DNA of 64,000 nt from Adineta vaga. Its lineage: Eukaryota; Animalia; Rotifera. A model generated the notes under the pieces. It was not told where the DNA came from and ran no database searches. It saw only the letters and a program-made list of their open reading frames with translations. Where the stretch lies: contig CP075497.1 of the NCBI GenBank assembly GCA_021613535.1, positions 6,014,001-6,078,000 on the forward strand. Direction: 5' to 3'. The translations under genes and the position numbers were made by a program. Below, in pieces: positions 50,169 through 55,982 of this stretch; within the stretch, counting starts at the first letter, position 1, and each line of letters starts with the position of its first letter.

Positions 50169-51501
50169 TCTTGATTGTTTAGCCTACACACACACTCGAA
50201 TATCTATAATAATAGAAATACGAAGGAATATATTTACAAACAAAAATTGTATGAACAATATTATTTAGACGAGAAAAAAAAGATCAGATTTGTTTATTTT
50301 TCCCCTGTTTTCGTATACGTAGTTCTCTCTTTAACAGGTAAACGAAGATCGACTAGAGACACAAGAGAGAGAAAAAAGTGAGAGATAGAGAAAGAGAGAA
50401 AAAGAGACCATGTACAAATAAATAAGTTTGTTTTCATGCTATCTACTTACTTGCCTATATGAAGGAGAAAAAGCGTCGTATTCTCTCTAAATTTATTCAT
50501 CTAGACGTGGGTGATGATGCAGGTTTCTCTCTCTTTCACTCTCTTGTCGATTTTTGTCTCTCTTGTCAGGCATATCAATCGACTCAAGGTGATTTTACAT
50601 AGGAAGCAGAGCACATCAGTGAATACTTTCGAATCAATGGCAAAAATGAAATGAGAGAAAGGATGAGGCATTTTTTTTTTCGTCGATGTGGGCAATCAAC
50701 CATAAACATCCATAACTAACAACCTCAAAGAAAAAAAAGAAAGAAACGACAGAAATGACGAGAGAAGAAAAAAACATTCGTTTTCACAGACATATTGATA
50801 CAAAAGACATGAATCTTGTGCGGAAACCATGCATGACAAAATTGATATGAATAACCATGATGATGATGATGATGATGACGAATAGGAAAGAAAAGAAATT
50901 AATGAAAGTCCAAGAATATAAACAATTATAAAAGGGAAAACGATTTGTCTTTAAAAAAATCATGAATTTTTTTAAAATGAGTTTAAAACAATATAATTTG
51001 TTTCATTATTAATTCAAGGTCATTTATCTGATCAGACTGATATGCATATGACGTATATATTTAGTAATTTTAATGAAGTGAAAAATTTCAATTAGACAGT
51101 GAATGACGTCCGTAGGTTTTTTTTATTTGAAATAGTTTTGGTGAAACAAAAAATAGATAAATAAAATAGAAAAAGAAACATTGAACATCGGCACGTTTAT
51201 TAGGACAATTAGAGAGAATTCTTTATTGTTTCGTCGTCGCTATCATCGTCGTCGTCGTCGTTGTCATTTTTATTTTACTGTTATAAATCACGAGAAAAAA
51301 AAAGTTCAATCGCGCGCGCGGATGTTCCATGTTATTTATGCGAGAAAAAAATAGCAAATATTCGTTGTGTTGCGAAAGAATGAAAAAAGAAATATGAACA
51401 AAAAAAAAATAAAACCATTTATTGTGTTTGTGCGTATGTATGTGTTTTTAAAGAAATAACACCATAGAATAGAATAGAGATCATGTCGTCGTTGAAATCA
51501 T

Positions 51502-52043
51502 CTATGAGCGACGCATGAACGTAAACAAAAACGAACATACGAGCACTAATAGAAGGAGCATATGTGGAACGAGAAGTTCTTCAGCACCACTTCCATTACG
51601 ATTTTTATAATCACGATACCATCGACCTTGAATACAAATGAATATAGTGAAAATTTCAGTTAGAAAGTCGGAAGTTAAACGTGTGCAAATGACTTACTGA
51701 TGAAGACTGTCAATGGAATAGCTGTAATGAAAAGACCCCAAACACCAATAGTATTTAGACAGCATAAACAACCAGTTAAACCACCAATAGGTCCAAGAAT
51801 AGCAGCAAGAAGACCAGCACCACCAGGCCCACGTCCAGCAGGTACTACTGGTCGTAGTGGAGGTCGAACACCATATCGACCTGTTGGTCGAGCATAACCT
51901 GATCGATAAACACCTCGTGAAGCTGAAACATTAGGCACATATCCTATAAAAATAGTAATTAAATGAAATTTTTCATTGTAAAATGACGAAAGATTCTACG
52001 CACGTGCTCGAGATCCTGAAAATCCGCCTGTTCGTTGAAACAT
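51502..52043 (-). CDS. Small Cys-cluster membrane protein with Arg/Gly/Tyr/Pro-rich N-terminus, paralog B
   Basis: Exons 52043-52004, 51943-51698 and 51626-51502 give MFQRTGGFSGSRARYVPNV...AILGPIGGLTGCLCCLNTIGVWGLFITAIPLTVFISRWYRDYKNRNGSGAEELLVPHMLLLLVLVCSFLFTFMRRS*. Confidence 0.8.
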
Positions 52044-53047
52044 AGCTGTAAATCAGCAGGCGGTGCTATTTATTTTTTCTGAAAAAAGAAAAGACAAGAA
52101 TTTTGATCGACAACAATGTGAAAAGCAGAGCTCAATAATTATAATGATAGTCAACAACAAACAACAACTGGACTCGAGAAGCAAGAAAGAAAGAAAGAAA
52201 GAAAGAGAATAGAAGAAAAAGAGAGAAATGCAGAAAAAGCCTTTCTTTTCTACCTTGATGTGCTTCAATGAGGATGTTTTAATTTTGTTGCTGTCTCTCC
52301 TTCTCTCTATCGTCCTCTATGTCGTTTTCTCTGTCTTTCTCGCTTCTGTTTCTCCCCCACCTCCGCTCTCTCTCTCTCTCTCACTCTCACTCTCTTCCTC
52401 TGCTCTTGCTGGCCGATCGACAGTAAGCAAAGGTTCTGTCGTGCATCTATATATCGTATGGCCAACTTGTAGAAAAAGTACTTCAGAAAAAGGCAAAGAA
52501 AAAATAGAGACAACGAATTATACAATGCATAAAAGGCGAGAAGAGGACGCGTCACACGTCAGCAAGCATCATGATGATGATAATGATGATATTTGCTGAC
52601 TATCAACGATACACTCATAAATGAAACCATGACTTCACCATTTTTATATGTCAGGAAAAGCGAAACAACATGTATTGACATGTGTAAGAATGTGTAATCG
52701 ATGCATGTATAACGACGTCTCTACTTCTATAAAATAAATCAGTACAAGGTTAGAAAATGAAGAGAAAAAAAAGAATCCAAAAGAGATACATTGCAAAAAA
52801 AGAGTGGATGACGCGCAGAAGCGTGGGCATATACAATATTTCTTTAACGCTTCGATGCACTTTTATTACAAGAATGTTTATGCAGCAAATGTATATGTAT
52901 TGATATGAAGCTACAAAAAACGAAAACGGAATTGATGTCTTGTAATATATTGGGAAAACTTAGCAATAATAATATGACAAAAATTCTTTTATTTTAAGAG
53001 AAAAAGAAATCAATAAAGACATATGTGTGTGTATAGATCAATGAAAG

Positions 53048-55098
53048 TTAACTTTTAACACGATTGTTTGTTTGCGGTTTTTTTACAGCTTGCACCGGTT
53101 TACGAACACTACTTTTGACAGTACTACCACGAACAATACGATTTGCTTGAGCTGGTCGACGAGTCGTAGCTAATGTTCGACGTGTTGTTGAACGACGTTT
53201 GCCGGGCATAGCGGTTTGTCGTCCTCGTTGTTTTACAGCTTGTTGATTTCGGAGAGGAAAGTTGTTGTTGTAGAACATTGCATCACTACCAGGAAAGACT
53301 ACACCAGGATAGTTATTCACACCATTGCCTATAAAAATCGATCGAATGATTGTAAAACTAAATTTATCTCATACAGTTTCCACTATATCCATTACCGTTA
53401 CCGTTATTGACATTGTTGATACCATTACCAGTTGTAGCACTGTTTACATTTGCGCCTGCATTACCATTACCATTGCTGTTTGTATTTGTGTTCGCATTTG
53501 GATTTGCATTAGCATTTGTATTAGGTAAGGTGTTCACATTCGTATTGGAAACTCCATTTCCATTGGCATTCGTATTAGGAACTCCATTTCCATTGGCATT
53601 CGTATTAGGAACTCCATTTCCATTAGCATTTGTATTTATAGGAGCATTGACATTAGTATTTCCATTAGCATAACCATTGTTGTTAGTGTTAGGAAAGGTG
53701 TTTGTATTTGTGTTAGGAACACCGTTTCCATTGGCATTAATAAAAGTGTTTGTATTCGTGTTAGGAACACCATTTCCATTAATATTACTATTAGTATTGA
53801 CGTTCGTGTTAGGAAAACTGTTAATATTGGTATTACCATTGACATTGGTATTAGGATAAATATTGCCATTGCTATTGGTATAGACTAGAAATCAATATGT
53901 TCGGTTTTTATTTTAGATTCAAATAAGAAAAAGTTCATTATATAGATAAATGTATATTGATAGAAAATGCACTGATTTTTATCATAATATTTACCTCCAT
54001 TATTTACATTATTTGTTGGATAGGAACCTATATAAAGATTTTAAATAACGGTTCTACAAATTTTCAAAAGACACATTTACCCGCATTTTGATTGTTAAAT
54101 GGAACAGCGTCTGAAACGGAAGAAAATGGTTATAAATTCTAAGAATATAATATATACTAATATCTTTTACTTGTTGAAAGTTGATTTATAATACCAGTAT
54201 AGTAATCATCTATGAAAATACTTATATGTATCATTCATTGCTGATCATAGTTTCAAAAAAATGAGCTACCTTCAGGATTTTCTGTGTTTGATGGACCAAA
54301 AGTCTCTATTGTGTTTTAAAGATAATAATTGTAACAAATGATTAGATTAAAAGTTACTACGCGACATACCTATAAAATAAATTTTGAGAAAAGCAAAGTT
54401 TGTATTAAGAACAAACTTTCATTAACTTACCGTATGTTTCCTCAAAAGGAACTGTTGTTGAACTTTCAGTAATTGCAGCTAATTCATATGAAAAGAAAAT
54501 CATTTCAATTATCAAACAAGAATCAAGTTGACCTACGGGTAGTTGTCGATGATGCTGTGTCTTCAAACAAAAAAGCAAAAATTCATATAGAAAAATAAAA
54601 GTGATAGAAGTTAAACTTACTTGTAGTATTAGTTGGTGCAGCATGAAAAATAGCACAACATGGATAACAAGCAAATACGGATAAAGCTTCTGCAACTCGT
54701 GTAGCCATGGAATCATAAACAGCACACATAGCTGATGCTGATGGTGGCATACATCGTGGACAAATTTGTCTTAAGCATGAGACCATTTCTTGATTACAAA
54801 CTTCTCGTGAAAACATGCATGAACTGAAACACATGCGATGAAGACATGTACATTCTTGATATTGTTGAGAATAACATCGAAGTGCAGCAAATGAACGTCC
54901 ATGTCGTTCCCAAAATGGACATGTTCCACCAGAACAAGATTTTTTTCCACGAACGGTACGTAAATAAGCATAAGCAGATTTTGGTGCTGGTGCTTTAGTT
55001 GTATTTCGTCCTGATGTGACAATCAGACGACGACGGGTCGTAGCTGAATTGACCAGCACAATAGTAAAACATAGTAAAACTACTAAACTCAATCGCAT
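53048..55098 (-). CDS. Secreted protein: inactive group-XII-like PLA2 domain + microexon-encoded stalk + Asn-rich repeat + basic tail
   Basis: Ten exons, all joined in phase 1 with GT-AG sites and no stop codon: 55098-54621, 54560-54537, 54478-54431, 54369-54361, 54305-54270, 54209-54195, 54110-54081, 54027-53995, 53884-53375 and 53328-53048. Signal peptide MRLSLVVLLCFTIVLVNS. Confidence 0.8.
53380..53880 (-). repeat. Coding tandem repeat (30-bp unit, NANGNGVPNT) within an Asn-rich exon
   Basis: Three near-perfect 30-bp copies at ~53538-53630 (cattcgtattaggaactccatttccattgg) plus degenerate copies on both sides. Confidence 0.9.
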
Positions 55099-55982
55099 AT
55101 TTGCACTAAGATTCCTTGGTGTAGTTTAGTGAAATGGGATAGAGAGTAATCAAATCCAAAATGTCGCTCTACTTACATTTATAGACACCGTTTATATGTT
55201 GATGAGTCGAAGCTCTTCTCTCTCTCTCTGTCTTTTTTCTCTCTATCTTATTAGGATTAAATACGTGTACGTGAAAGAATGTGGTTTTGAGTGTATATTC
55301 ACGACATAATGACAAACATTTGAAAAAAAAACTACAACTAAATCATCACCTTGACTTTCAGTGATCAACTCATAATGGATATGATCAAAGTTTATTACAT
55401 ACGTCTAGAATTATTCACTAAACAAGTTAAGATGTTTTATTTCCGTTAACCTTGGAGTTTTGAAACTTTTCGTATTCAAACGTGTTCATTTTTTTCAATC
55501 GAAAGAAGAAAAAGAAAAGAAAAGACGTGTTCCAACTTTATCTTTTAAGTAAAAGGTCGTTGTCTAGTATAGTTTATTGTCATTAAAAGTTCTAATAGTA
55601 AAACAAGAAAGAAACAAACGAGACCAAGACATATATCGAAATGAGAAAATGTATGACAAGAGTTAAGCCGAATAATCGATACTCAATAACAATAACAAGA
55701 ACATCCTTGCACATATCGAGAAAAAAAAACTATCATCAATTATTATCGAAAGGTCTTCTCCAGATCACTTTTTCAAATCGAAACAATTCGATGTGTACTG
55801 CAAATACGTTATGCTACTAAAATCTCACCAATCGTTTATCAATATACTGAATGATCTATGTATGCAAGATGACAAATGATTTCAAAACAATACATGTCGA
55901 AAACTTTCGGATACATTTTGTTGTATACTCTAGGTTATTTATTGAAGAACTAACAAGTATCAAAAAATATTTTTTTAAAAGT

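What the first reader, a model, noticed from the sequence alone, without database searches (positions are those of the whole stretch)
53995..54560. Seven consecutive symmetric phase-1 microexons (24, 48, 9, 36, 15, 30, 33 nt): a micro-exon-gene-like cassette
Seen: each piece is flanked by AG/GT, is a multiple of 3 and is phase 1-1. Joined, they read NTASSTTT-PAITESSTTVPFEETY-GMS-QTFGPSNTENPE-DDYYT-DAVPFNNQNA-GSYPTNNVNNG with no stop codon, and the following 510-nt exon is also symmetric. Any subset can be skipped without frameshift (up to 128 combinations). Established: this layout typifies schistosome micro-exon genes, which diversify secreted proteins. Inference: a combinatorial splicing system tuning stalk length, O-glycosylation and a possible Tyr-sulfation site (EDDYY) in a secreted protein. 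It is invisible to the ORF track.
Basis: partly seen in the sequence, partly recalled or inferred. Interest (0 to 1): 0.85.

Follow-up and report, generated by a model that had tools for sequence, protein, structure and literature searches.

The report
Six real microexons, one ghost exon
The string of tiny in-frame exons is real and transcribed, but RNA shows six exons (not seven) that are always included together, so it looks like an ordinary flexible linker of a secreted protein; the seventh "exon" is a conserved empty splice-site pair inside an intron.

Summary
The finding lies in a minus-strand gene (ATG 55098, stop 53048) of an AT-rich animal genome.

Spliced RNA contigs from four independent studies confirm five microexons exactly: 24, 48, 36, 30 and 33 nt. 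They correct a sixth from 15 to 39 nt and shorten the next exon from 510 to 489 nt. The 9-nt piece is never included. All real exons remain phase 1-1 and multiples of three. Every contig carries all six microexons, and no skipping joint was seen. The combinatorial-splicing reading is therefore unsupported.

The gene encodes a signal peptide and a diverged group-XII-phospholipase-A2-like Cys-rich head in which the His-Asp dyad has become His-Arg. After that come a Ser/Thr/Asn-rich linker (the microexons), an Asn-rich repeat and a basic tail. The family is small and lineage-restricted (13 clusters). The all-phase-1 microexon layout recurs in the syntenic second copy and in about 15 other genomic copies, with changing exon number and length.

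The 9-nt "exon" starts at an invariant YAG|GTATGT that sits mid-intron in 14 distinct homologous introns of 108-140 nt. It is a candidate zero-length exon, that is, a recursive splice site. Its use has not been shown.

The parts
54621..55098 (-). Exon 1 (478 nt, ends in phase 1). It encodes a predicted signal peptide plus a Cys-rich head domain with 15 invariant Cys. The domain is a diverged PLA2G12-like core in which CCxxHDxCY has become C[TV]CLHRMCF.
   Evidence: Frame and translation. RNA contigs cover 54621-55182. Invariant columns. hhalign against the genome's own PLA2G12 domains gives 87%, E 4e-6. Atlas feature hit to PF06951 scores 0.91. Pfam itself gives no hit.
54537..54560 (-). Microexon, 24 nt, phase 1-1
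   Evidence: Joints 54560/54621 and 54478/54537 in X1, X17 and X18
54431..54478 (-). Microexon, 48 nt, phase 1-1
   Evidence: Joints at 54478/54537 and 54305/54431
54364..54371 (-). Juxtaposed acceptor and donor, TAG|GTATGT, 61 nt into the 125-nt intron (54430-54306). It is a candidate zero-length exon or recursive splice site.
   Evidence: Absent from the mRNA. The same YAG|GTATGT is invariant in 14 distinct homologous introns, with halves of 51-70 and 52-73 nt. Splice-site scores are near those of real sites.
54270..54305 (-). Microexon, 36 nt, phase 1-1
   Evidence: Joints 54305/54431 and 54209/54270
54171..54209 (-). Microexon, 39 nt, phase 1-1.
   Evidence: Joint 54110/54171 in all four runs
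54081..54110 (-). Microexon, 30 nt, phase 1-1
   Evidence: Joints 54110/54171 and 54027/54081 in four runs
53995..54027 (-). Microexon, 33 nt, phase 1-1
   Evidence: Joints 54027/54081 and 53884/53995 in four runs
53396..53884 (-). Large symmetric exon (489 nt, phase 1-1) encoding Asn-rich repeats. It holds a 48-nt in-frame copy-number variant at 53725-53772.
   Evidence: Joints 53884/53995 and 53328/53396 in four runs. The 48-nt skip with TT..CA ends and 8-nt microhomology appears in X1 and X5 only.
53048..53328 (-). Last exon (281 nt including the stop). It encodes the conserved GV(V/F)PGS motif and a basic Thr/Arg-rich tail.
   Evidence: The tail is conserved in homologues.

Best explanation
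The cassette is a constitutively spliced array of six phase-1 symmetric microexons (24, 48, 36, 39, 30, 33 nt).

These microexons encode the first part of a disordered Ser/Thr/Asn/Pro-rich linker. The linker sits in a secreted, lineage-restricted protein, probably of bdelloid rotifers. The protein's head is a diverged and probably non-catalytic group-XII-phospholipase-A2-like Cys-rich domain, and its tail is basic.

Because every intron of the gene is in phase 1, exon units can be gained, lost, lengthened or shortened over evolutionary time without breaking the frame. That is what the family shows: the head and tail are conserved, while the number and length of microexons change from copy to copy. 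The modularity therefore acts in evolution, not as combinatorial splicing within one animal.

Shown here:
- the exon structure and its constitutive inclusion in assembled transcripts;
- family-wide phase-1 symmetry;
- turnover of the exons between copies.

Inferred:
- secretion;
- disorder and glycosylation of the linker;
- the PLA2-like fold and loss of catalysis.
For: - Eight canonical joints are seen in spliced contigs of four studies. One path contains all six microexons: 210 nt lie between exon 1 and the large exon in X1, X17 and X18, and X5 covers the 3' half.
- The syntenic second copy on contig C3 has 71% identity in exon 1, and its downstream neighbour gene is shared. It has microexons of 33, 51, 18, 45 and 42 nt, all phase 1.
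- Annotated models in two other assemblies have exons of 33/54/15/138 nt and 30/48/21/36/153 nt, all phase 1.
- A splice predictor that was free to choose any phase returned phase 1 for all internal exons in 16 of 17 further loci.
- Spliced mRNA contigs of other species encode the same head-linker-tail order (P0006 and P0010).
- Only 13 clusters in 1.84 billion proteins match the head, all at 65-77% identity.
- The link between the head and PLA2G12 rests.
Against: - Contigs drop rare variants, so low-level skipping cannot be excluded.
- Unused in-frame alternative donors exist (54194 and 53374).
- The structures in the metagenome loci are predictions made with a small self-trained model.
- No significant sequence similarity among the microexons, or between them and the large repeat exon, was found. 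Origin by duplication of exon units is therefore not shown.
- Pfam does not recognise the head, and the AlphaFold model is poor (pLDDT 58).
Confidence: 0.75

Rival explanations
1. One reading: a micro-exon-gene-like combinatorial splicing system. Subsets of the symmetric microexons would be skipped to produce many protein variants of different stalk length and modification.
For: - All internal exons are symmetric and phase 1, so any subset could be skipped in frame.
- In-frame alternative donors are present at two exons.
- The 9-nt piece is an example of a skippable unit.
- Schistosome micro-exon genes use such a layout for variation (PMC10526429).
Against: - No skipping joint was seen in contigs of four independent studies; a single full-inclusion path was found.
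- Microexons are only 14% of the coding sequence.
- In the homologues the 9-nt unit cannot code, because a stop follows the AG in phase 1.
Confidence: 0.1
2. This concerns the 9-nt site only. The conserved YAG|GTATGT is a working zero-length exon. The roughly 120-nt intron would be removed in two steps of about 60 nt each (recursive splicing). The site would be kept by selection because once a strong internal donor and acceptor sit side by side, losing either one would cause half-intron retention and a premature stop.
For: - It is invariant at 8 of 8 positions, and preceded by a pyrimidine tract, in 14 distinct introns whose other positions have diverged.
- It is present in both syntenic copies and in another assembly.
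- Each half (51-73 nt) has the usual intron size of these genes (47-77 nt).
- The donor regenerated after step one scores like real donors (median 4.5 against 5.0; decoys -1.0).
- Nothing of it remains in the mRNA.
- The logic is the same as for Drosophila ratchet points and the Ubx microexons that begin with a donor (10.1101/006163).
Against: - No intermediate or lariat was seen; only contigs were available.
- Other introns of 102-148 nt in the family, including the RNA-verified 110-nt intron here, lack such a site, so length alone does not demand it.
- Two family members (L006 and L015) lack it.
- Known recursive introns are at least 11 kb in flies.
Confidence: 0.35
3. The microexons are chance AG..GT open pieces in non-coding DNA, and the gene model is an artefact.
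For: AT-rich DNA offers many AG and GT dinucleotides.
Against: - Spliced transcripts from four studies use exactly these junctions.
- The layout is conserved in paralogue and homologues.
Confidence: 0.01

Closest known systems
Schistosome micro-exon genes (MEGs)
   Same: - A signal peptide in the first exon.
- A run of short internal exons that are multiples of three and symmetric.
- A secreted product that is largely disordered.
- Automatic annotation has trouble with them (PMC10526429). Here several public models of homologues read through introns.
   Different: - MEGs have 10-20 microexons (6-81 bp) that make up most of a small protein (189 aa or less), separated by long introns (100-5000 bp), and they are alternatively spliced.
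- Here six microexons make 14% of a 485-aa protein and introns are 53-125 nt.
- A large folded head and a 489-nt repeat exon are present.
- No skipping was seen.
- There is no sequence relationship.
Drosophila ratchet points / zero-nucleotide exons and the Ubx mI/mII microexons (recursive splicing)
   Same: - A juxtaposed 3' and 5' splice site with a strong pyrimidine tract.
- It is conserved far above the flanking intron and absent from the mRNA.
- In the window copy a tiny would-be exon begins with a donor consensus, as the Ubx microexons do (10.1101/006163).
   Different: - Fly recursive introns are 11-133 kb. Here the whole intron is 108-140 nt and each half is an ordinary short intron.
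- Use of the site is not demonstrated.
Phase 1-1 symmetric exon modules of extracellular proteins (exon-shuffling class; from general knowledge)
   Same: The signal-peptide exon ends in phase 1 and all internal modules are 1-1. Units can therefore be inserted, duplicated or deleted in frame. The linker varies strongly between copies.
   Different: The modules here are not folded domains but 8-16-residue pieces of low-complexity linker. No duplication signal among them could be shown.
Group XII secreted phospholipase A2 (Pfam PF06951)
   Same: - The Cys pattern around the active-site helix aligns: CCxxHDxCY...C...C with C[TV]CLHRMCF...C...C.
- hhalign gives 87%.
- The nearest language-model clusters are PLA2G12 and other PLA2 families.
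   Different: - The domain is not matched by the Pfam model even at E 10, although seven genuine PLA2G12 genes of the same genome are.
- The catalytic Asp is an invariant Arg.
- The GCGP calcium-loop motif is not aligned.
- It is fused to a long linker and a basic tail.

Membership tests
Schistosome-type micro-exon gene | Internal exons are short, multiples of three and symmetric | tested here: met
   Exons of 24, 48, 36, 39, 30 and 33 nt, all phase 1-1 and verified by RNA
Schistosome-type micro-exon gene | Microexons make up most of the coding sequence of a small protein (10-20 microexons, 189 aa or less) | tested here: not met
   210 of 1458 nt (14%), six microexons, 485 aa. Definition taken from PMC10526429.
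Schistosome-type micro-exon gene | Protein variation through alternative inclusion of microexons | tested here: not met
   A single full-inclusion path in contigs of four studies. Rare isoforms cannot be excluded with contigs.
Schistosome-type micro-exon gene | N-terminal signal peptide | tested here: inconclusive
   A hydrophobic N-terminus of about 19 residues, conserved in position across homologues. No signal-peptide predictor was available.
Schistosome-type micro-exon gene | Sequence relationship to known MEG families | tested here: not met
   No Pfam hit. All 13 related clusters are the same head-domain family.
Recursive splice site (zero-nucleotide exon) | Juxtaposed YAG|GTRWGT with an upstream pyrimidine tract inside an intron | tested here: met
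   TAG|GTATGT at 54371-54364 with a T-rich tract
Recursive splice site (zero-nucleotide exon) | Conservation well above the flanking intron sequence | tested here: met
   100% at positions -2 to +6 in 14 distinct introns; flanks are 42-92% and mostly compositional. The introns otherwise do not align.
Recursive splice site (zero-nucleotide exon) | Junction reads from the upstream exon to the site, and lariats from both steps | not testable with these tools
   The single read-laying run returned assembled contigs only, and they show only the final product.
Recursive splice site (zero-nucleotide exon) | Host intron is very long (at least 11 kb in flies) | tested here: not met
   The host introns are 108-140 nt, against 11,341-132,736 bp in flies.
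Group XII secreted phospholipase A2 (PF06951) | Match to the family profile above its cut-off | tested here: not met
   No Pfam hit at E 1 or below. The locus is not among 11 PF06951 matches in its own genome at E 10 or below.
Group XII secreted phospholipase A2 (PF06951) | CCxxHDxCY active-site helix with the His-Asp dyad | tested here: not met
   It aligns to C[TV]CLHRMCF. The His is kept and the Asp is replaced by an invariant Arg.
Group XII secreted phospholipase A2 (PF06951) | PLA2 fold | tested here: inconclusive
   - hhalign gives 87% over 61 columns and the Atlas feature score is 0.91.
- However the AF2 model has pLDDT 58, and Foldseek against the PDB gives nothing at E 0.001 or below.

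The most novel reading that the evidence does not exclude
A ghost of a former microexon would survive only as an abutting acceptor and donor (YAG|GTATGT). The roughly 120-nt intron would be taken out in two steps of normal intron size.

If true, this would be recursive splicing in an intron about a hundred times shorter than the shortest known in flies. It would also be an example of splice sites that outlive their exon because each protects against misuse of the other.
Probability: 0.3. Interest if true: 0.7.

Novelty: new variant of a known kind. Interest (0 to 1): 0.45.

Why it matters
- It shows that a micro-exon-gene-like layout (a signal peptide exon followed by a run of symmetric phase-1 microexons) exists outside flatworms, in a different and lineage-restricted secreted protein family. 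Here the layout serves evolutionary turnover of a disordered linker, not isoform diversity. That cautions against reading exon symmetry alone as evidence of combinatorial splicing.
- It gives a corrected, RNA-supported gene model for a locus that automatic annotation mishandles in related assemblies.
- The conserved abutting splice-site pair in a short intron is a concrete, cheaply testable candidate for recursive splicing under intron definition, and for how microexons die.

Tried and rejected
- Pfam on exon 1, the large exon and the last exon found no family.
- A profile search of the head against PDB sequences found nothing.
- AlphaFold on the head gave pLDDT 53 alone and 58 with 11 homologues. 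Foldseek against the PDB had no match at E 0.001 or below and listed no phospholipase.
- A protein search with the Asn-rich large exon, meant to recover partial transcript ORFs and so look for skipped isoforms in other runs, was swamped by low-complexity candidates and gave no hit.
- A test of whether the microexons are diverged copies of the repeat unit of the large exon, or of each other, was not significant. The best p values against shuffles were 0.04-0.07, uncorrected.
- A tree of head domains, meant to decide whether the empty splice-site pair or a real microexon is ancestral, was unresolved: 12 of 15 inner branches were open.
- A scan of the 64-kb window for further YAG|GTAWGT sites in intron context found only this one, so nothing can be said about generality.
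- A literature search for micro-exon genes in rotifers found no relevant paper.
- Earlier notes of the scan on recursive sites or microexon cassettes held nothing pertinent.
- The joined (spliced) coding sequence or protein was never sent to a search or fold tool. Searches were made exon by exon by reference, and joined translations were computed only inside scripts to check frames.

Full report
**Setting.** The window is AT-rich (about 30% G+C). It belongs to a 100.8-Mb assembly in six contigs. Introns in and around the gene are 47-130 nt, and the gene has a diverged second copy in a collinear block on another contig. From general knowledge this fits a bdelloid rotifer such as Adineta. The tools code organism names, so I treat that as an inference. 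The finding lies on the minus strand, in a gene with its ATG at 55098 and its stop at 53048.

**Observation.** So the description is accurate as sequence.

**Transcript evidence.** I laid the contigs of four runs from four different studies on 52850-55250. All four hold spliced forms with canonical intron ends (CT..AC on the plus strand), so they are RNA-derived. The genome has no intronless copy; exon 1 matches only two loci.
- The joints confirm to the base the 24-, 48-, 36-, 30- and 33-nt exons, and also the acceptor of the large exon at 53884.
- There are three corrections:
  - The '15-nt' exon uses a donor 24 nt further on, so it is 54209-54171, 39 nt.
  - The large exon ends at 53396, so it is 489 nt, not 510.
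  - The 48-nt exon is joined directly to the 36-nt exon across 125 nt, so the 9-nt piece is not in the mRNA.
- Record coordinates settle the last point. In X17, X18 and X1 the stretch between exon 1 and the large exon is exactly 210 nt, which equals 24+48+36+39+30+33.
- All corrected exons are still multiples of three in phase 1-1.
- No alternative joint was reported in any run, and the intron bins have zero depth.
- The only other joint is a 48-nt skip inside the large exon (53725-53772) in two runs. It has non-splice ends and 8-nt microhomology, so it is a repeat copy-number variant and not splicing.

**The protein.**
- The corrected coding sequence is 1458 nt, of which the microexons are 210 nt (14%).
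- Exon 1 gives a hydrophobic N-terminus and a Cys-rich domain with 15 invariant cysteines.
- An exhaustive HMMER search found only 13 related clusters among 1.84 billion representatives, all at 65-77% identity. The family is small and lineage-restricted.
- Pfam, PDB sequences and Foldseek on a mediocre model gave nothing.
- A language-model feature search put group XII phospholipase A2 clusters first (0.91, 183 of 256 features) and other PLA2 families behind.
- I took the genome's own genuine PLA2G12 domains, aligned them and compared profiles. hhalign gave 87% probability, E 4e-6, over 61 columns. It places CCxxHDxCY opposite C[TV]CLHRMCF and lines up three further cysteines.
- The histidine is kept, and the aspartate that binds calcium in PLA2s is an invariant arginine.
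- After the head come the microexon-encoded Ser/Thr/Asn/Pro-rich linker, an Asn-rich repeat, a conserved GV(V/F)PGS motif and a basic Thr/Arg-rich tail.

**Family-wide anatomy.**
- The second copy (contig C3) has 71% identity in exon 1, and its downstream neighbour gene is shared with the window. It has microexons of 33, 51, 18, 45 and 42 nt, all phase 1, and no large repeat exon.
- Annotated models in two other public assemblies map to exons 442/33/54/15/138/260 and 439/30/48/21/36/153/143, all phase 1. The 138-nt exon contains a retained intron of about 60 nt.
- Spliced mRNA contigs from two further runs encode the same order of parts with quite different linkers.
- A metagenome scan gave 20 more genomic loci.
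- I wrote a small splice-graph predictor, trained on the RNA-verified window gene and one annotated model and free to use any phase. It reproduced my by-eye reading of the untrained second copy. In 16 of 17 further loci it returned only phase-1 internal exons, with varying numbers and lengths.
- The symmetric phase-1 microexon layout is therefore an old, conserved property of the gene family, while the exons themselves turn over quickly.
- I could not show that the exons arose by duplication of one unit.

**Reading of the cassette.** The most economical explanation is a constitutive microexon array encoding a fast-evolving disordered linker. Uniform phase 1 lets units be gained, lost or resized in frame over evolutionary time. 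Contigs do drop rare variants, so I leave it about 10%. As a member of the schistosome micro-exon gene kind it fails on three counts: the share of coding sequence in microexons, intron length and observed alternative splicing. It meets only symmetry and, probably, secretion (PMC10526429). No paper on such genes in rotifers was found.

**The 9-nt piece.** This piece begins at TAG|GTATGT, 61 nt into the 125-nt intron.
- The same abutting acceptor and donor lies at the same relative place in the second copy and in another assembly.
- After adding the metagenome loci, it is found in 14 distinct introns of 108-140 nt. The AG and GTATGT are invariant, a T-rich tract lies upstream, and the halves are 51-70 and 52-73 nt, which is the normal intron size here.
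- The rest of these introns does not align.
- In most copies, reading on from the AG in phase 1 hits a stop within three codons. The conserved object is therefore not a coding microexon but a zero-length one.
- Its acceptor scores close to real sites and far above intronic decoys, and so does the donor regenerated after joining the upstream exon. This rests on a rough, small-sample scoring matrix.
- This is the anatomy of a Drosophila ratchet point, and the window's 9-nt version recalls the Ubx microexons that start with a donor (10.1101/006163). The host intron, however, is about a hundred times shorter than any recursive intron reported there.
- Against a need for it:
  - Other 102-148-nt introns of the family, including the RNA-verified 110-nt one, have no such site.
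  - Two family members lack it and have a 15- or 24-nt exon nearby.
  - The head-domain tree is too unresolved to say which state is ancestral.
- I propose, as inference, that it is the ghost of a microexon whose two splice sites are kept because loss of either would leave a strong unpaired site and cause half-intron retention with a premature stop.
- Whether it is actually used stepwise could not be tested. The one read-laying run returned contigs, which show only the end product.

**Limits.**
- No raw reads were available.
- Organism names are hidden.
- Structures in the metagenome loci are predictions.
- No signal-peptide, glycosylation or sulfation predictor was run.
- The spliced model was searched exon by exon by reference. 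The joined sequence was never sent to a search or fold tool and was translated only within scripts to check frames.

**Verdict.** This is a real and correctly noticed feature with two boundary errors and one false exon. The mechanistic claim of combinatorial splicing is not supported. The array is a new variant of a known kind (symmetric microexon cassettes in secreted proteins) in a new lineage and gene family. It comes with an unexpected by-product, a deeply conserved empty splice-site pair, that deserves a direct test.

Noticed in passing
window 53725-53772 (minus strand, inside the 489-nt exon): A 48-nt (16-codon) in-frame deletion relative to the assembly appears in RNA contigs of two studies (X1, X5) but not in two others (X17, X18). 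It has non-splice ends and 8-nt microhomology. It is probably an allelic or strain difference in repeat copy number.
   Followed up: partly
window 51497-52095 (minus) and L003:2456-3100: The gene just downstream is a small protein with a G-P-x-G-G-L-x-x-C-x-C-C-L motif, flagged separately by the scan. It is also just downstream of the second copy on contig C3 (75-100% identity in pieces). The two loci therefore lie in collinear duplicated blocks.
   Followed up: partly
P0002, P0003, P0005, P0007, P0008, P0001 (public predicted proteins of homologues): Several public gene models of this family read through the first intron into nonsense tails. One keeps a roughly 60-nt intron as coding sequence, and one looks like a fusion of two copies. 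The microexon region is systematically mis-annotated.
   Followed up: partly
window 54194 and 53374 (minus strand donors): There are two unused in-frame alternative donors: one 24 nt upstream of the real donor of the 39-nt exon, and one 21 nt downstream of the real donor of the large exon. Neither appears in the contigs.
   Followed up: yes
G000 contigs C1, C3, C4, C5, C6 (loci L032-L037): The genome carries at least seven genuine group XII phospholipase A2 genes above the Pfam cut-off. Each has an intact CCxxHDxCY motif, except one that reads HY.
   Followed up: no
L028-L030 (metagenome contigs, 49% identity in the head): This is a more distant branch of the family with only one 27-nt microexon and a 348-nt repeat exon (units N-K-P-V-N-G/A-N-A). 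There is no long intron and no abutting splice-site pair.
   Followed up: no
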